A DNA stretch of 8,956 nucleotides. Origin: Paramicrosporidium saccamoebae KSL3 (taxonomy: Eukaryota; Fungi; Cryptomycota). The position numbers and the translations under genes were made by a program. Shown here piece after piece: positions 470 through 8,955 of this stretch; position 1 is the first letter of the stretch; the number at the start of each line of letters is the position of its first letter. The notes below the pieces were generated by a model, which did no database searches, had not been told where the DNA came from, and saw nothing but the letters and a program-made list of their open reading frames with translations. The DNA is taken from NCBI GenBank assembly GCA_002794465.1, contig MTSL01000094.1, positions 1 to 8,956 of the forward strand, read 5' to 3'.

Positions 470-1427
470 ATGAGAAAGATTGCCGTGCTGTTTCCGGGAC
501 AGGGAAGCCAGTCCGTGGGAATGCTAAAGGCTGTGCTACAAAAGAGTGAGGGAGCGAGAGAACTAGCACGGCGAGCAAACATGTTGCTGGGATACTCCTT
601 GACAGAGCTAATTTCATGTGGACCTGAACTACGGCTGGCCAAAACGGAATACACTCAGCCTGCTGTCGTGTTGGCATCATTGTGTCAATGGGAATTCATA
701 AAGGAGAGCAGTGTCGTGCCCAAGGAAGCGAAACTGATAATGGCTGGAAATTCTATCGGAGAGTATTCGGCGTTGGCGGCTGCTGGGTGGATGGGCTTTG
801 ACTTGGCTATGGAATTGGCAGTACCGATTACGTTGATTTACATAATGTTAGGCACTACGGGGGAGGATCATGGCCGAATGCGAGGGAGGAGTGATGACAG
901 TGGTTAATCTCGAGACTGCAAGTGACTTGGCCTCGGTGACGGAGAGGCTCAACAGCGATAGGGATCCATCACTGGCAGGAATCTCAGCCGTCAATTCTTC
1001 TGTCCAACTGGTGATATCTGGAGAGGCAGTGGAAATTGGACGGTTGGAGACGATTCTTAAAAGCAATCCCAAGGTAAAAAGTATTCGGAGGATCCGGAAT
1101 GTAAGTTGCGCTTTCCATTCGCCTCTCATAAAGTCAGCCAGCGAAAAGTTTCATAGAGACGCAATGCATCTGCTCAAAAAGATTCAGGCTAACAAAGACG
1201 TTCCAGTTATCAGCAATCTAACGGCCCAATTTCACACTCAGGAAACAATTGCAGATTCGTTGACGAGACAAATATCGGGAACAGTCCGATGGAATGATAC
1301 GGTGCAGCTCCTCAATAGGATGGGCGTCTCTGCAATCCTGTCGATCGGGCCAGGTAATGTCATTCAGAATCTTATAGAAAGAGATCCATCAGTCACTATT
1401 CCCTTAATACACTCTGGTCAACCCTAA
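470..1427 (+). CDS. MCT1: Malonyl-CoA:ACP transacylase (FabD/MCT1 family), join(470..820,852..1427), 308 aa
   Basis: N-terminal LFPGQGSQ, TEYTQPA, nucleophile elbow GNSIGEY, AFHS, and C-terminal V-RW and GPGNV motifs. Removing intron 821-851 joins ORFs 470 and 870 and yields MELA|ALRGRIM, matching the conserved FabD RG-xM segment. Confidence 0.92.
821..851 (+). other. Spliceosomal intron in MCT1, 31 nt, phase 0
   Basis: GTACCG...CATAATGTTAG; excision restores the frame and the conserved Arg motif. Confidence 0.9.
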
Positions 1428-3718: not shown

Positions 3719-4533
3719 TTAGTCATAGTCCATACGGGCGGCGAGGTTCTCTTTGGCAACACGGATGGCCGCCTCCAGCACCTCCTTGGGCACAATCTGA
3801 TGTTGGTTATTCGACTCGGGTCCAATCCAACTCATCTCCAACTCAAAATCCTTGTCCTTGGCCGGGTCATGCGCCAAATAGATGATTTTGGCGGCCTCCA
3901 CGACGGCCTGGGACACGGTCATGCTGTCCAGGTCGAGTTTTTCAATTTCCGTCTTGGCCGTCTGTCGTCCCTTTCCTGCAGCACACCCGCGATATCCCCA
4001 ACACACGCCCGACGGCTCAACCATGTAAAGATGGGAGCCATCCTCATCCACCGCAGCCATCAGCAAATTGCCACAGAATGGCCTCACACTGCCATAGAGC
4101 GTATAGGCCTGCACATACATGGCCAGGCGGTCGGCAAGCATTGGTCCTGGGATGCCAGTGGCAAAGTTTTCCCGATGGGAGGCAGATTCCTCACGGGCCC
4201 GCAGAGCGAGAGCACGACAATCGGCTGCCAGTCCAGCACCGACGACACCGGCATGCAACTCGACGGTATGGATGCGTCGGTTTGCTCCGGCCTTGAGAAG
4301 ACGCGAATGAATTGGTTTTTCTACCGCCAGAACAACGCCGTCCTTGACCTTGAGTCCAATGGTGGTTCTACACATTATGGCCCATTCTGTGAATACCCCG
4401 AGTTTTCAACAGCCTTGGAGGCATATTCGACCTGAAAGATGCGTCCATCGGGCGAAAAGGTGGTGGTGCTCAAGTCGTACTACAGAGAATGACAAAGGTT
4501 GAATGGAAGTACTCCTGCGCCAATGGATGCCAT
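3719..4533 (-). CDS. PRE10: 20S proteasome alpha-7 subunit (PSMA3/Pre10), complement(join(3719..4367,4397..4479,4513..4533)), 250 aa
   Basis: The spliced N-terminus MASIGAG|[28 protein letters not shown]|[17 protein letters not shown] is the alpha-7 signature; also [26 protein letters not shown] and [11 protein letters not shown]. Confidence 0.96.
4368..4396 (-). other. PRE10 intron 2, 29 nt, phase 2
   Basis: GTATTCACAGAATGGGCCATAATGTGTAG on the minus strand; excision gives ENSG|TTIG. Confidence 0.92.
4480..4512 (-). other. PRE10 intron 1, 33 nt, phase 0
   Basis: GTACTTCCATTCAACCTTTGTCATTCTCTGTAG on the minus strand; excision gives SIGAG|YDLS. Confidence 0.92.
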
Positions 4534-4562
4534 ATTGTGGGAGGACGGGGGTGGCAAGGACT
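4534..4562. promoter_or_regulatory. 29-bp spacer between divergent PRE10 and TAF2 start codons; contains PACE-like GGTGGCAAG (4550-4558)
   Basis: ATTGTGGGAGGACGGGGGTGGCAAGGACT lies between CAT (4531-4533) and ATG (4563-4565). The motif matches the Rpn4 site GGTGGCAAA at 8/9. Regulatory function is inferred. Confidence 0.55.
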
Positions 4563-7500
4563 ATGGAGGAGCCCGCAGATATCATACGACAAGATCCTCG
4601 CGGATACTTTCCACGTACCCTTTGTTATAAGGAATAACACATAGTTCATCAAAGGGTCACTTTGCGCATCCACCCGGTCGAGAAAGGGGTCAGTGCCGTC
4701 TCGGATATCCGCATTCAATGCACTGACAGCAGTCTGACCACCCTAAGTCTGCACGCACGTTGCATTGATATACAGACGGTTAGCATAGACGGAAATGCGG
4801 CCGAATATACTTTGGAAAGGGTCGCTTTGGACACGTTGGTCCCTGAGGGAGTGACCGTCGGCGCACCAAGCGAGCTCATCCAGTATCCCAACCGTCTTCG
4901 CCAGGAAATCTTGAATTCTCGGGACCGGAGTGAACTCAAAGTCACCCTTCCAACTGTCCGGGCTGGGGAGGAGATTGTCCTGCGGATTGAATATGAGATG
5001 AAGCTGTCCTTTTTGGCACGCATGGATGGCGAGGAGACGAGGTATTTCCAGGTGCATGCGACTGGGATGGACGGAATGGGTCGACATTGGCTTCCGTGTT
5101 TCGAAGACGATCCCATTCTGTGGGACTTTGAGTACCGCATCAGCACGGATAAAATTCCGTCCTTGTTAGCCACCCAGAACATCCATGTGGCCAGTTCCGG
5201 AGCGCTTTGTCAACAATTTTTTCTTCCCGAGGAGAATACCAAAGTGCTGCAATTCAAGCTTGATGTGCTTACTCCCCCGAGAAATGTGGGCTTTGTTGCA
5301 GGTATTTTTGAGATGGTGCGGGTGCCAGCAGCGCCTTTTGCAGCGGCCTTTTGTCCGCTGGGCATGGCAGCCAAACTGACACTGTCAGTAGAGTTTCTGT
5401 CTCGCGCCTTTGGATACATTAATTGGTATCTGACCACCACATTTCCATATCCATCGTATTACTGCGTGTTCCTGCGCGAGGCCTTTGCCGCATCTGAATC
5501 GGCCTCGGTGGCTAATATCTCTCTGTTCAGCACATTGGCCTTATTCAACAATACCATTATCGATCAGACCCTAAAGACTCGTAGTCTCATCAGTGCTGCT
5601 CTTGCCGAGCAATACTTTGGTGTTCGTCTGAGGGCCGAGGGGAGCGCCAGTCGATGGCTAACCCAAGGAATCAGTGGATTCCTGGCACGACACATGTTGC
5701 GTATCTTTCACGGAAACAATGATTTCCGTTATAATTTGAAAAAGGCCATGGCAACGCTACTTGCAGTTGACACGGGACACGGTCCGATTGTTGACGCTCC
5801 CGATGTATTTGCTAATCCCGCCGACGAAGATTGGCTGAGACTAAAGTCCTGTCTAACAATGATTGTGTTTGAGCATCGTTTGGAAAAGGGCGCTTTGCAA
5901 AAGGTCAGCGCTTCTTGTCCACTAATTGGTTAGATTTTGGCCCATATTTGGAGCGAGTTTCTTGAGGATCGACTGCCAGGTGGAGTGTTAGGAACGGGCG
6001 TCTTCTTGAAGTTGGCCAAGAAGATTAGCGGAAAGGATATGCGATCCTTTGCGGACCAATGGATCTTTTCAGCGGGATGTCCAGTGTTCAGTTGCACATT
6101 CTCCTTCAACCGTAAACGGTCGACCATTGAAGTGGATGTGAAGCAGTCCACTCCCAACCATCCACAACGAAAAGTGGCTGGCACATTGCTCATCCGCGTC
6201 CACGAGGTCGACGGAGTCTTTGACCATTCAGTGCACATTGACGACTTTTCGCATCATTTCGAGCTCCCAGTTCATGCCAAAGCCAAGAAGATTAAAAAGA
6301 AAAAGCGTCTACTGATGCCAGATCAGCCTGAGCCTGCAGTAGACACTAAGGAAGAGGAGGAAGACACGTTTGTGTCGCCGTTGTCATGGATCCGACTTGA
6401 CCCGGAGATGGAATGGATTGCGTCATTGGAGCTGCATCAGCCCGACTTTATGCTCGTGGAGCAGCTGCAAAACGACCGGGACGTGATTGCCCAACACGAG
6501 GCCATTGAGAGTCTGTGTCGTCAGCCCTCTGATACGGTGATTGAAGCATTGGAACGGATTCTGAATGATCCCAAATGTTTCTATCGGATCCGTATTGAGG
6601 CGGCGGAGGGATTGGCCGGATGTGCTCCCAACCCGGAAACCCATTTGGGAGGACTCAAGTTGATCTCTTTCTATAACAAAGGCTTTGCACTGCAATCACT
6701 GGAGACGGTGGTGGTGCCGGTGCCCAAGACTAACAACTTTGAGGCGCTGCAGAGCTATTTTATCCAATCCTCCTTGGCGGGGGCAATGGCCAAGATCCGC
6801 ACCAAGAACGGTACGTTAATGGAGCTGGTGGGTCAGATTCTACTGAATATGCTGCGTTTCAATGACAATGCGGGGAACATGTACAGCGACAATTACTATG
6901 TCGTCTCGCTGTTACGGGCTATGTTGGAGCATCTGCGGGTGCGACGTGAGACTGATTTGCCCACTGAACGGTTACTACGCGAATTTGTCAAAGAGTTGGA
7001 CCGCTACGCCATTGTGGAAAAGATTCAGCCATACTATCACAATACGGTAATGGTTACCATCCTGGATGTATGGCGTGAATTGCGACTAATGGGAATGACC
7101 CATTCCACAGCCATTGTCTGTCCCGAAGTCTTACTGAAGGAGGGAAATTTTGTAAGTGTTCGTCTGGCTGCGCTGGAATATCTGCTGAGTACAGAAGAGT
7201 TGCTGTCCGACTCGATCTGCGAGTCTCTACAGAGTTTATTGACGGGCAATCGAGGGATCCGGGCTGCAACGCTGGACAGGCTGCTTCGAATAACACCAAA
7301 GTCCATTTCCTGTCGCACCGACTTTAACGCCAAAAAGGAGTTCCTGCTTGATCTGCTTAGTCAGATGGATCTGGCCTATGTTTCGCAGAGCGTGCAATAT
7401 CTATACTTTGTGGGACGACTCATTGAAACGGCGACGTTGGACCGTCCGACTGAGAGCGGACGTATTTCGTTGCGGATTGCGCTGCCTGTTGAACACGAAC

Positions 7501-8831
7501 TCAGCTCGGCAGATGAACATGTGGGGACGGTGGGCGAAGAGGAGCCTGATTGGTATTTGGAGGTGGGTGGGGAGCAGGGCTCCCGGGTCCGTCCCAGTGT
7601 GACTCCCAAACTACGACTTGCCATGCCCGATTCCTCTCCAACAGGAAAACTTGCAGCGGTAGTACAGGGCATCTGGAGCAACTTTGATAGTTTCCCCTTT
7701 CGCTATCCCGTCGATCCGTCAGTGGTGGGTTATTACGACGTCATTAAGAACCCCGTGGATCTGAGCACAATCCAAGATCGACTGCGCAAGGACATTATCT
7801 CTTCTGTAGCACAACTCTGTGAGGATCTGCGGCTAATGTTTGATAACTGCTTCCTGTTCAATCTGCCCGAATCGCTTATTTATGAGCAGGCCAAGCGACT
7901 GCGTAGTCACGCTTTGAAAGAATTTCGTCGCGTCTTTCCCCTTCAGTTTAAGGAGATTAGGGCCGTCTTAATGACCAAGGAACCTGTGGTCATTATCCCC
8001 GATATCATTGCCGACGTTGTTCCCGATGTCGTGGCACGACCTCCCAAAGTCCCCAAGACGCCGGAATTGTCACTAACAGAACGCATGGAGCGGGTTTTGG
8101 AAAAGACGCGCAGCCATCCCTATGCATTCTGGTTCCTGACGCCAGTGGATCCCGTTGCTCTCAATATTCCCACCTATCCAGAGATTGTCACCGAGCCTAT
8201 GGATTTGGGTACTCTTGAACAGCGGCTTCGTGCCGGCGACTTTGCCGACAATCCGAGAGAATTTGTTCGATTGCTTGATATAATCTTTGTCAATTGCACC
8301 ACCTTTAATCCTGTCAACACAGTGGTGCACCAGAATGCTCTGCAGATGCGCACGGCTGCACAAAAACTGGTGAAAAAGCTGTTACCCGAGACAACTACGA
8401 CCGAAAGTGTGCCCAAACTCAAGCTCACTCTCAGTCCCAAAAAGTCTGCTGAGACGGGCGGGCTAAAGCTAAAGTTGACGCTGCCTCCAAGGGACGACTC
8501 CTGGTATGCATCGGCACAAAAAATTCTCGATCAGGTGAGCGCCCATGAATTTGCCATCCCCTTCCTCCAGCCCGTTGATCCCGTCCTCCTTAATCTGCCC
8601 TCTTATCCGCGCATCATTAAGAATCCCATGGATCTCTCCACCATCCGCGCTAAACTCTCCTCTGCCTCCTACACGAGGGCCACCGAGATGCATCGCGACT
8701 TTAAATTAATGTTTTCCAATTGCTATCGGTTCAATGGACGGACCGCACCGATTTCAGAGGCCGCAAAGATATTAGAATCTTTTTACGACTCTCTCTATCT
8801 CCAATGTATACATGGTGTTTCTGATGAATAA
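4563..8831 (+). CDS. TAF2: TFIID subunit 2 (M1-aminopeptidase-like pseudoenzyme) with three C-terminal bromodomains, join(4563..4614,4645..5903,5934..8831), 1402 aa
   Basis: TAF2-like segments: YFPLHQRVTLRI, RHWLPCFED, LAEQYFG, WLTQGISGFL, FADQWIFSAGCP, LLIRVHEVDGVFDH, WIRLDPEMEW, DRDVIAQHEAI, FYRIRIEAA, YSDNYY, YHNTV. Basic patch KAKKIKKKKR is a probable NLS. Three bromodomains follow in the same ORF. The start at 4563 depends on intron 4615-4644. Confidence 0.92.
4615..4644 (+). other. TAF2 intron 1, 30 nt, phase 1
   Basis: GTACCCTTTGTTATAAGGAATAACACATAG; contains an in-frame TAA. Excision links ATG 4563 to the ATG-less ORF at 4662. Confidence 0.85.
5904..5933 (+). other. TAF2 intron 2, 30 nt, phase 0
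   Basis: GTCAGCGCTTCTTGTCCACTAATTGGTTAG, with a CTAAT branch site; excision joins ALQK|ILAHIW. Confidence 0.92.
7647..7931 (+). other. Bromodomain 1 of TAF2 (approximate bounds)
   Basis: PFRYPVDP..GYYDVIKNPVDLSTIQDRL...DLRLMFDNCFLFN; conserved Asn codon at 7860-7862. Confidence 0.92.
8082..8381 (+). other. Bromodomain 2 of TAF2 (approximate bounds)
   Basis: WFLTPVDPVALNIPTYPEIVTEPMDLGTLEQRL...IFVNCTTFN; conserved Asn codon at 8307-8309. Confidence 0.92.
8502..8801 (+). other. Bromodomain 3 of TAF2 (approximate bounds)
   Basis: PFLQPVDPVLLNLPSYPRIIKNPMDLSTIRAKL...DFKLMFSNCYRFN; conserved Asn codon at 8733-8735. Confidence 0.93.
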
Positions 8832-8833: not shown

Positions 8834-8955
8834 ATTTGTGGTAATATTTGTGGGGTGATATCTGCGATAATATTGGTGGTACTATTTGCGAAAATATTTG
8901 TGGTAGTGTTCACGAAAATTCTTAGTCTCATCTATGTGTGAGTGTCTACGAAAAT
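8834..8955. repeat. Degenerate 12-nt minisatellite downstream of TAF2
   Basis: ATTTGTGGTAAT, ATTTGTGGGGTGAT, ATCTGCGATAAT, ATTGGTGGTACT, ATTTGCGAAAAT, ATTTGTGGTAGT, GTTCACGAAAAT; the phase is still kept at 8944-8955 (GTCTACGAAAAT). Confidence 0.8.

What the first reader, a model, noticed from the sequence alone, without database searches (positions are those of the whole stretch)
5934..8831. TAF2 fused in-frame to three bromodomains: acetyl-lysine reading moved onto a different TFIID subunit
Yeast and human TAF2 have no bromodomain. Animals carry TFIID's double bromodomain on TAF1; budding yeast Taf1 lacks it and TFIID recruits Bdf1 instead. Here one exon runs without a stop from the TAF2 core into three bromodomains, each with the ZA-loop PVD/P-DL pattern and the acetyl-lysine-binding Asn, so the fusion is not a splicing artefact. 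It suggests a third architecture with multivalent acetyl-histone reading on TAF2. I recall bromodomain-bearing TAF2 annotations in some basidiomycetes and early-diverging fungi, so the fusion may be under-studied rather than new; the three-domain count and its function need checking.
Basis: partly seen in the sequence, partly recalled or inferred. Interest (0 to 1): 0.8.

Follow-up and report, generated by a model that had tools for sequence, protein, structure and literature searches.

The report
Fungal TAF2 with three bromodomains
This is the TFIID subunit TAF2 gene of the amoeba parasite Paramicrosporidium saccamoebae, which really does carry three acetyl-lysine-reader (bromo) domains on its tail. 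That layout was published in 2019 and is common in fungi outside the ascomycetes, so this is a new member of a known kind.

Summary
One ORF (5937-8831, +) runs without a stop from the TAF2 Ig-like and TPR/HEAT core into three Pfam bromodomains (72, 58 and 86 bits against a cut-off of 21.7). Each domain keeps the acetyl-lysine Asn and the ZA-loop Tyr.

The window is a whole 8,956-bp contig of Paramicrosporidium saccamoebae (Rozellomycota). The gene is the deposited PSACC_01248.

The architecture is not new. Antonova et al. 2019 (Genes Dev, PMC6672047) described one to six bromodomains on TAF2 in basidiomycetes, Mucoromycota and Blastocladiomycota. In my exhaustive TAF2-core search, 59 of the 150 best cluster representatives carry one to seven bromodomains, and three is the commonest number. 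Every organism-named carrier looked up (15 of 30 look-ups) is a fungus.

Findings that go beyond that paper:
- The lineage, Rozellomycota, was not in that survey.
- The domains are closest to BET/Bdf1 first bromodomains.
- The disordered linkers carry hxhKh motifs like the Taf14/ENL ET-binding motif of yeast and human TAF2 tails.
- The deposited gene model is mis-spliced at two 30-nt introns.

Acetyl-histone binding is inferred, not shown. Whether this genome's TAF1 lacks bromodomains, or a separate Bdf1 exists, could not be tested.

The parts
4563..4614 (+). TAF2 exon 1 (my corrected model). It encodes MEEPADIIRQDPRGYFP plus the first base of a Leu codon.
   Evidence: Splicing 4614 to 4645 gives GYFPLHQRVTLRI. 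This matches the conserved TAF2 N-terminal G-Y-x-V-x-HQ-K/R-V block seen in P0015, P0013, P0017 and P0019. With this exon, Peptidase_M1_N matches weakly at aa 17-70. The deposited model instead starts at about 4491, on top of the proteasome gene's first intron.
4615..4644 (+). Intron 1, 30 nt: GTACCC...CATAG.
   Evidence: It belongs to the same 29-33-nt GTA/GTC...TAG class as the other four introns in the window.
4645..5903 (+). TAF2 exon 2: the M1-aminopeptidase-like N-terminal half.
   Evidence: It aligns with TAF2 homologues along its length. Peptidase_M1 matches weakly and below Pfam's cut-off (E 0.006).
5904..5933 (+). Intron 2, 30 nt, in frame, containing the TAG at 5931-5933.
   Evidence: Removing it restores ...ALQK|ILAHIWSEFLEDRLPGGVLGTG..., which aligns with 12 homologues. 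The relative P0002 reads straight through this point in one ORF. The deposited model splices 5929-5991 and deletes this conserved block.
5934..8831 (+). TAF2 exon 3: Ig-like domain, TPR/HEAT domain, three bromodomains and the stop codon.
   Evidence: Single ORF; Pfam. The corrected protein is 1,402 aa.
6072..6443 (+). TAF2 Ig-like domain (PF25316).
   Evidence: 126.5 bits against a cut-off of 27.
6444..7244 (+). TAF2 TPR/HEAT domain (PF25577).
   Evidence: 147.8 bits against a cut-off of 27.
7605..7628 (+). PKLRLAMP: an hxh(K/R)h motif in the disordered segment just before BD1. Candidate ET-domain-binding motif.
   Evidence: pLDDT is below 50 here. PKL(K/R)(L/I/V) is conserved at this position in 9 of the 13 aligned homologues. 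Human TAF2's ET-binding motif (LVLNL, aa 994-998) sits at the equivalent place, the start of the C-terminal disordered tail.
7638..7973 (+). Bromodomain 1. Pfam match 7656-7895; Asn codon 7860-7862.
7983..8057 (+). Disordered linker between BD1 and BD2.
   Evidence: Model residues 137-161 have pLDDT below 50.
8073..8381 (+). Bromodomain 2. Pfam match 8085-8342; Asn codon 8307-8309.
8400..8489 (+). Disordered linker between BD2 and BD3. It carries PKLKLTLS (8412-8435) and GLKLKLTL (8460-8483), two candidate ET-binding motifs.
   Evidence: Model residues 276-305 have pLDDT below 50. (L/I)K(L/I)K(L/I) is conserved before the last bromodomain in 7 of the 13 aligned homologues. The motif is defined in PMC9177701.
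8496..8807 (+). Bromodomain 3. Pfam match 8517-8768; Asn codon 8733-8735.

Best explanation
This is the TAF2 (TFIID subunit 2) gene of Paramicrosporidium saccamoebae.

The protein, about 1,402 aa, has four parts:
- the usual catalytically dead M1-aminopeptidase-like N-terminal half;
- the TAF2 Ig-like domain;
- the TAF2 TPR/HEAT domain;
- a C-terminal tail in which three BET-like bromodomains are strung on disordered linkers, in place of the purely disordered tail of yeast and human TAF2.

The domain architecture, the fold and the conservation of the pocket residues are shown. The following is inferred. Each bromodomain binds acetyl-lysine, most likely on H4 or H3 tails of promoter-proximal nucleosomes. 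The three flexibly tethered readers then give TFIID multivalent affinity for acetylated chromatin. Metazoan TAF1's tandem bromodomains do this job in cis, and Bdf1 does it in trans in budding yeast.

The linkers keep short hxhKh motifs. In yeast and human TAF2 tails these motifs bind the ET domain of the YEATS readers Taf14 and ENL. The tail probably therefore also recruits an ET-domain partner.

The arrangement is the standard one for non-ascomycete fungi, not a peculiarity of this genome.
For: Identity:
- 100% match to PSACC_01248, which UniRef names TFIID subunit 2.
- Pfam TAF2_3rd, TPR_TAF2_C and three bromodomains in one ORF.

Fusion is real:
- A metagenomic relative (61% identity) has the same order of four genes: MCAT, FYVE, proteasome, TAF2.
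- In that relative TAF2 plus three bromodomains is one uninterrupted 4,167-nt ORF.
- Eleven further database homologues at 28-61% identity carry two or three bromodomains.

Spread:
- 59 of the 150 best TAF2-core cluster representatives carry one to seven bromodomains; the mode is three.
- Named carriers lie in Mucoromycota, Mortierellomycota, Chytridiomycota, Zoopagomycota (all three subphyla) and Pucciniomycotina.
- The architecture is published in PMC6672047.

Reader competence:
- The Asn140 equivalent is kept in 191 of 200 TAF2 bromodomains and the Tyr97 equivalent in 198 of 200, including all three here.
- Model pLDDT is above 90 per domain.
- Foldseek gives TM about 0.9 and rmsd about 1 A to BRD3/BRDT/BRD2 first bromodomains.

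BET-like character, from single-domain PDB hits:
- BD3: BRD3 BD1, 2.7e-21.
- BD2: Candida Bdf1, 2.1e-17.
- BD1: BRDT BD1, 1.1e-14.

Flexible tethering: linkers have pLDDT below 50 and pTM is 0.38.

ET-binding-like motifs:
- h[KR]h[KR]h occurs 51 times in the linkers of bromodomain-bearing TAF2s, against 4.4 expected from shuffles.
- It occurs 53 times against 5.3 expected in the tails of bromodomain-less TAF2s.
- The motif's function is described in PMC9177701 and PMC13643176.
Against: - No binding data exist for any TAF2 bromodomain. A phrase search for TAF2 bromodomains found only the 2019 survey and one unrelated 2009 paper.
- Histone rather than non-histone ligands is an assumption.
- The Tyr139 equivalent is Phe in all three domains, and the WPF shelf is FPF, FWF and IPF. 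Ligand preference may therefore differ from BRD4.
- I could not show that this genome's TAF1 lacks bromodomains, or whether a separate BET protein exists.
- No transcript evidence was available to me for the splice sites or for a single mRNA.
- The hxhKh motifs could instead be nuclear localisation signals or DNA-contacting basic patches.
Confidence: 0.75

Rival explanations
1. The bromodomains read acetylated non-histone proteins rather than histone tails. Candidates are activators, other TFIID or SAGA subunits, or TAF2's own tail. They would then serve assembly or regulation rather than chromatin anchoring.
For: The pocket residues are intact but the shelf residues differ from BET (FPF, FWF and IPF instead of WPF). 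The tail also holds protein-docking motifs. ENL and Taf14 are known to use both acetylation-dependent and acetylation-independent contacts with cofactor disordered regions.
Against: The closest solved relatives are histone-tail readers (BET first bromodomains, Bdf1). TFIID's known bromodomain partners, TAF1 and Bdf1, read H4 acetylation (established knowledge, cited).
Confidence: 0.15
2. The bromodomains are structural or degenerate modules that no longer bind acetyl-lysine, retained as spacers or interaction surfaces.
For: Bromodomain number varies from 0 to 7 among fungal TAF2s, and ascomycetes lost them all. The domains are therefore dispensable in some lineages.
Against: The Asn is kept in 191 of 200 and the ZA-loop Tyr in 198 of 200 TAF2 bromodomains across phyla. 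That is not expected for domains freed from ligand binding. Each of the three domains has position-specific orthologues down to about 36-40% identity.
Confidence: 0.07
3. The fusion is an artefact: a misassembly, or two adjacent genes that are transcribed separately (TAF2, and a Bdf1-like bromodomain protein from an internal promoter).
For: No reads or cDNA were available to me. In Batrachochytrium dendrobatidis different annotations split or merge the TAF2 locus (1,444 + 1,006 aa against 2,295-2,439 aa). Gene models in this family are therefore error-prone.
Against: There is no stop codon in frame between the TPR domain and BD3. Composition is uniform across the junction. A relative in an independent assembly has the same continuous ORF with the same neighbouring genes. 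At least 59 independent clusters share the architecture.
Confidence: 0.03

Closest known systems
Fungal TAF2 with C-terminal bromodomains (Antonova, Boeren, Timmers and Snel 2019, Genes Dev 33:888; PMC6672047)
   Same: A TAF2 core is followed by multiple C-terminal bromodomains, one to six in that survey. The authors proposed that this compensates for missing TAF1 bromodomains and gives TFIID an alternative way to bind chromatin. The window protein fits this exactly with three.
   Different: That survey named basidiomycetes, Mucoromycota and Blastocladiomycota. Its text does not mention Rozella, Cryptomycota or Microsporidia. This example places the architecture in the lineage that the Paramicrosporidium genome paper puts as sister to Microsporidia (PMC5701793). 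The survey did not type the bromodomains or note the ET-binding-like linker motifs.
Metazoan TAF1 tandem bromodomain module (e.g. PDB 1EQF, 3UV5)
   Same: Acetyl-lysine readers are covalently part of a TFIID subunit and there is more than one of them. The multi-domain model aligns to the TAF1 tandem in Foldseek (E about 1e-9).
   Different: The subunit is TAF2, not TAF1. There are three domains rather than two. They are separated by predicted disordered linkers of about 25-30 residues rather than packed as a rigid tandem (rmsd 14-21 A over the tandem alignments). By sequence the domains are nearer to BET than to TAF1: BD2 and BD3 do not list TAF1 among their best 60 PDB hits.
BET family / yeast Bdf1 (BRD2, BRD3, BRD4, BRDT; Candida Bdf1 structures 5N13, 8R6L)
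   Same: These are the closest solved sequences and structures for each domain. Bdf1 is the TFIID-associated bromodomain factor of budding yeast (Matangkasombut et al. 2000, cited).
   Different: No ET domain is detected. The domains are in cis on TAF2. TAF2 bromodomains are more similar to one another than to BRD4 BD1 or BD2, which rank 31st to 134th among 200.
Yeast Taf2 C-terminal tail binding Taf14, and human TAF2 tail binding ENL, through an ET-binding motif (PMC9177701, PMC13643176)
   Same: Short hxhKh/hxhxh motifs lie in the disordered C-terminal tail directly after the folded TAF2 core. The window has three such motifs in predicted disordered segments.
   Different: Here the motifs are interleaved with bromodomains. 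Binding to an ET domain has not been tested for this or any bromodomain-bearing TAF2.
Plasmodium falciparum PfBDP6/TAF2 (PF3D7_0724700) and Cryptococcus neoformans CNAG_03273
   Same: Both are listed in the literature as TAF2 orthologues that carry a bromodomain.
   Different: I did not examine those sequences. Their bromodomain number and relationship to the fungal TAF2 bromodomains are not established here.

Membership tests
TAF2 (TFIID subunit 2) | TAF2 Ig-like domain (PF25316) followed by the TAF2 TPR/HEAT domain (PF25577) | tested here: met
   126.5 and 147.8 bits against cut-offs of 27.
TAF2 (TFIID subunit 2) | N-terminal M1-aminopeptidase-like domain | tested here: inconclusive
   Peptidase_M1 (E 0.006) and Peptidase_M1_N (E 0.002) match below Pfam's cut-offs. 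The region does align along its length with TAF2 of fungi and insects. The sequence reads LAEQYFG in that region, with no HExxH.
TAF2 (TFIID subunit 2) | Best database relatives are TAF2 orthologues | tested here: met
   All named hits are TFIID subunit 2, from Syncephalis, Anopheles, Microctonus, Aspergillus and Lachnellula. The core search gives 270 cluster representatives at E <= 1e-30.
TAF2 (TFIID subunit 2) | Physical membership of the TFIID complex | not testable with these tools
   Needs purification or proteomics.
Bromodomain (PF00439) | Left-handed four-helix bundle with ZA and BC loops | tested here: met
   Three bundles with pLDDT above 90. TM 0.86-0.93 and rmsd 0.9-1.6 A to BRD3, BRDT, BRD2, CECR2 and BAZ2A bromodomains.
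Bromodomain (PF00439) | Acetyl-lysine-anchoring Asn (BC loop) and water-network Tyr (ZA loop) | tested here: met
   N/N/N and Y/Y/Y at the BRD4 Asn140 and Tyr97 columns.
Bromodomain (PF00439) | Binding of acetyl-lysine peptides | not testable with these tools
   Needs peptide arrays, ITC or NMR.
Fungal TAF2-bromodomain architecture (Antonova et al. 2019) | TAF2 core with one or more bromodomains C-terminal to it, in a fungus | tested here: met
   The organism is Paramicrosporidium saccamoebae (Rozellomycota).
BET family (Bdf1, BRD2-4) | Two bromodomains followed by an ET domain | tested here: not met
   No ET/BET-domain family appears in the Pfam scan of the 964-aa ORF. The protein is a TAF2. 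Only the individual domains resemble BET first bromodomains.
TAF1-type tandem bromodomain module | Two bromodomains packed against each other as one rigid unit | tested here: not met
   By prediction only. The inter-domain segments have pLDDT below 50 and pTM is 0.38. Alignments to TAF1 tandems have rmsd 14-21 A.
ET-binding motif of TAF2 tails | hxhKh/hxhxh motif in a disordered region that binds a Taf14/ENL/BET ET domain | tested here: inconclusive
   The sequence motif, its disorder, its positional conservation and a roughly ten-fold enrichment are met. Binding was not tested, and I could not check whether the genome has an ET-domain protein.

The most novel reading that the evidence does not exclude
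The TAF2 tail may be an ancestral fungal 'reader hub'. On this reading, BET-type bromodomains were inserted among pre-existing ET-binding motifs at or before the base of Fungi, since they are present in the lineage sister to Microsporidia. Most fungal TFIIDs would then combine, on one flexible tail, direct multivalent acetyl-lysine reading with recruitment of a YEATS-ET reader. The bromodomain-less Taf2 plus free Bdf1 of ascomycete yeasts would be the derived, split version of this arrangement, and not the other way round.
Probability: 0.3. Interest if true: 0.45.

Novelty: new member of a known kind. Interest (0 to 1): 0.25.

Why it matters
The finding mainly bears on how representative the yeast TFIID models are. 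S. cerevisiae and S. pombe, whose TFIID has no chromatin-reader domain, are the exception among fungi.

The Paramicrosporidium gene shows that TAF2-borne bromodomains also exist in the reduced genome of an intranuclear parasite close to Microsporidia. This is consistent with an early fungal origin of the architecture.

No TAF2 bromodomain has been characterised biochemically. Ligand specificity, the purpose of one to seven copies, and any interplay with ET-domain readers remain open but are easy to test.

For genome annotation, the 29-33-nt introns of this organism mislead gene callers, and the deposited PSACC_01248 model should be corrected.

Tried and rejected
- **Wide architecture survey with the indexed protein search.** The full ORF gave only 16 hits and a six-sequence TAF2-core profile gave only 8. 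I replaced it with the exhaustive representative search and a local bromodomain HMM.
- **Looking for a separate Bdf1/BET protein of P. saccamoebae.** Searching with BD3 alone returned 3 candidates and one hit, a 125-aa fragment at 90% identity from a JGI metagenome. The TAF1/Bdf1 question is therefore unanswered. No tool here lets me query one eukaryotic proteome.
- **Plasmodium literature.** PMC1199594 mentions bromodomains only for TAF1. The PfBDP6/TAF2 label comes from a table in PMC9010790 and was not examined further.
- **Intron or transcript information in the genome paper.** PMC5701793 has no text on introns, TFIID or bromodomains.
- **A fixed distance between the hxhKh motif and the next bromodomain.** Rejected. 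The gaps range from 12 to 430 residues with a median of 76. The motif is equally enriched in bromodomain-less TAF2 tails, so it is a feature of the tail, not of the bromodomain.
- **Stop-codon read-through or TAG reassignment at 5931-5933.** Rejected in favour of a 30-nt intron. The nine residues before the TAG have no counterpart in any homologue, and four other introns of 29-33 nt ending in TAG occur in the window.


Full report
**What the window is.** The 8,956-bp window is an entire contig of Paramicrosporidium saccamoebae. The 964-aa ORF matches NCBI protein PSACC_01248 at 100% identity. That protein is 1,377 aa, UniRef names it 'Transcription initiation factor TFIID subunit 2', and its longest contig is 8,956 bp.

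The window holds five genes or gene ends:
- the 3' end of a UPRTase gene (52-291);
- a malonyl-CoA:ACP transacylase gene (470-1427);
- a VHS-FYVE-UIM (Vps27/Hrs-like) gene (to 3442);
- a proteasome alpha-subunit gene on the minus strand (3719-4533);
- TAF2 (4563-8831).

**Checking the observation.** ORF 5937-8831 is open for 964 codons. Pfam places the TAF2 Ig-like domain at aa 46-169, the TAF2 TPR/HEAT domain at aa 170-436, and three bromodomain stretches in the same ORF. Scanned one at a time, the bromodomains score 71.7, 58.2 and 85.8 bits against a cut-off of 21.7.

Aligned to BRD4 BD1, all three carry the acetyl-lysine Asn (N140 column) and the ZA-loop Tyr (Y97 column).

An AlphaFold2 model of the last 418 residues was built with 13 homologues as the alignment. 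It gives three helical bundles at pLDDT above 90, joined by segments below 50, with mean pLDDT 81.9 and pTM 0.38. Foldseek matches single domains to BRD3, BRDT and BRD2 first bromodomains at TM about 0.9, rmsd about 1 A and about 40% identity.

**Is the fusion real?** Several lines say yes.
- The TAF2 core and the bromodomains share one exon, so no splice prediction is involved.
- GC content is flat across the junction.
- A relative at 61% identity, on a 148-kb JGI metagenome contig, has the same four genes in the same order: MCAT, FYVE, proteasome (minus strand), TAF2. Its TAF2 with three bromodomains was called as one uninterrupted 4,167-nt ORF.
- Homologues down to 36-39% identity keep three bromodomains. 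More distant ones, including Syncephalis plumigaleata, keep two.
- Each of the three window domains finds its best matches at the same ordinal position in these relatives. The triple arrangement is therefore inherited, not a recent internal duplication.

**Gene model.** The deposited model is wrong in two places.

At 5903/5934, a 30-nt in-frame intron (GTCAGC...GGTTAG) contains the only stop between the two long ORFs. Removing it restores the block ILAHIWSEFLEDRLPGGVLG, which aligns with twelve homologues. The deposited 63-nt intron (5929-5991) deletes that block and keeps nine residues that align with nothing.

At the 5' end, starting at ATG 4563 and removing a second 30-nt intron (4615-4644) yields GYFPLHQRVTLRI. 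This is the conserved TAF2 N-terminal motif.

The other three introns I could place in the window are 31, 33 and 29 nt. All five begin GTA or GTC and end TAG. The corrected protein is 1,402 aa. The TAF2 and proteasome start codons are divergent and only 29 nt apart (4533 minus strand, 4563 plus strand).

**How common is the architecture?** Antonova et al. 2019 (PMC6672047) reported that fungal TAF2 carries a variable number of bromodomains, one to six, in basidiomycetes, Mucoromycota and Blastocladiomycota. They found none in ascomycetes. They suggested that the domains compensate for missing TAF1 bromodomains.

I repeated the survey independently. An exhaustive HMMER search used the bromodomain-free part of exon 3 (571 aa) against 1.84 billion cluster representatives. 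It found 270 proteins at E <= 1e-30.

I then applied a bromodomain HMM built locally from the window's three domains and iterated twice. It found one to seven bromodomains in 59 of the 150 best representatives, and in 58 of the 112 that are at least 1,000 aa long. The distribution is 7, 10, 24, 10, 3, 3 and 2 proteins with 1 to 7 domains. Three is the mode.

Look-ups named these carriers:

| Organism | Bromodomains |
|---|---|
| Hesseltinella | 5 |
| Calcarisporiella | 2 |
| Linnemannia | 4 |
| Blyttiomyces | 6 |
| Gaertneriomyces | 4 |
| Fimicolochytrium | 4 |
| Globomyces | 2 |
| Batrachochytrium | 1 or more |
| Neoconidiobolus | 6 |
| Basidiobolus | 2 |
| Coemansia | 3 |
| Tieghemiomyces | 3 |
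| Syncephalis | 2 |
| Austropuccinia | 3 |

All are fungi. The literature also lists Cryptococcus CNAG_03273 and Plasmodium PfBDP6/TAF2 as bromodomain-bearing TAF2 orthologues.

The kind is therefore known and widespread. What this window adds is a member in Rozellomycota, a lineage absent from the text of the 2019 survey. The genome paper places it as sister to Microsporidia.

**What kind of bromodomains?** Against all PDB sequences, the best single-domain hits are all BET family:
- BD3: BRD3 BD1, 2.7e-21, and every one of the top 60 single-domain hits is a BET first bromodomain.
- BD2: Candida Bdf1, 2.1e-17.
- BD1: BRDT BD1, 1.1e-14, with CBP/p300 close behind.

TAF1 appears only for BD1, and there as a two-domain sum.

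TAF2 bromodomains nevertheless resemble one another more than they resemble BRD4. No ET domain is present. They therefore form their own BET-like group, and the protein is not a BET-family member.

Across 200 TAF2 bromodomains the pocket Asn is kept in 191 and the Tyr in 198. This argues for maintained ligand binding.

**Linker motifs.** Three short motifs sit in the predicted disordered segments:
- PKLRLAMP, just before BD1;
- PKLKLTLS, between BD2 and BD3;
- GLKLKLTL, between BD2 and BD3.

They fit the hxhKh/hxhxh ET-binding motif. Through that motif the yeast Taf2 tail binds Taf14 (PMC9177701) and the human TAF2 tail binds ENL (PMC13643176).

Two of the motifs are positionally conserved in the aligned relatives. 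The pattern h[KR]h[KR]h is about ten-fold over-represented in two sets:
- the linkers of bromodomain-bearing TAF2s, 51 observed against 4.4 expected from shuffles;
- the last 300 residues of bromodomain-less TAF2s, 53 observed against 5.3 expected.

The motif is therefore an old feature of the TAF2 tail, and the bromodomains lie among these motifs. Binding to an ET domain is inference.

**Mechanism.** The domain order, fold, pocket conservation and flexible tethering are shown. It is inferred that the three domains bind acetylated histone tails and raise TFIID's affinity for acetylated promoter nucleosomes by avidity. This would be functionally equivalent to TAF1's tandem module in animals and to Bdf1 in budding yeast. 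I put this at about 0.75.

The rivals are non-histone ligands (0.15), non-binding structural domains (0.07) and artefact or separate transcripts (0.03).

**What could not be done.** I could not test whether this genome's TAF1 lacks bromodomains. I also could not test whether it has separate BET or YEATS-ET proteins. The third homology search returned one hit, and no tool gives access to a single eukaryotic proteome. No reads or cDNA were available.

**Verdict.** Novelty is low: this is a new member of a known, published and widespread kind. Interest is 0.25.

Noticed in passing
window 4491-5991 (TAF2 5' part): The deposited gene model PSACC_01248 appears mis-spliced at both introns. Its start near 4491 overlaps the opposite-strand proteasome gene. 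Its 63-nt intron (5929-5991) removes a conserved 21-residue block. A model with ATG 4563 and two 30-nt introns (4615-4644 and 5904-5933) fits all homologues and gives 1,402 aa.
   Followed up: yes
window 821-851 (+), 4480-4512 (-), 4368-4396 (-), 4615-4644 (+), 5904-5933 (+): All five introns I could place are 29-33 nt long, start GTA or GTC and end TAG. Three are multiples of three and contain in-frame stops. Introns this short are easy for gene callers to miss or misplace.
   Followed up: partly
window 7605-7628, 8412-8435, 8460-8483: hxhKh motifs (PKLRLAMP, PKLKLTLS, GLKLKLTL) lie in the disordered linkers around the bromodomains. They match the ET-domain-binding motif of yeast and human TAF2 tails. 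The motif class is about ten-fold enriched in TAF2 tails with or without bromodomains.
   Followed up: partly
window 4531-4565: The start codons of the proteasome alpha-subunit gene (minus strand, ATG at 4533-4531) and of TAF2 (plus strand, ATG at 4563) are only 29 nt apart. The two divergent genes must share or overlap their promoter and 5'-UTR regions.
   Followed up: no
window 8834-8919: A degenerate tandem repeat lies directly after the TAF2 stop codon and runs towards the contig end. Its period is 12 (ATTTGTGGTAAT, 5.8 copies, 64% matches) or 24. It may be why the assembly stops here.
   Followed up: partly
L001 1-16167 (JGI metagenome 3300036987, contig Ga0377238_000378): An uncultured relative (TAF2 61% identical) keeps the UPRTase, MCAT, FYVE, proteasome and TAF2 genes in the same order. 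Its MCAT and TAF2 genes have no intron where the window has one. A separate JGI fragment (P0169) is 90% identical to BD3. Close relatives of P. saccamoebae are therefore present in environmental data.
   Followed up: partly
P0156 cluster (Batrachochytrium dendrobatidis): Different B. dendrobatidis annotations give the TAF2 locus as one protein (2,295-2,439 aa) or as two adjacent ones (1,444 + 1,006 aa). Bromodomain counts for TAF2 taken from deposited gene models, including some of mine, may therefore be underestimates.
   Followed up: no
window about 5600-5625 (TAF2 aa about 347-353, LAEQYFG): The M1-peptidase-like half matches Pfam only weakly, and the sequence shows no HExxH zinc-binding motif in this region. 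This fits TAF2 being a pseudo-peptidase.
   Followed up: no
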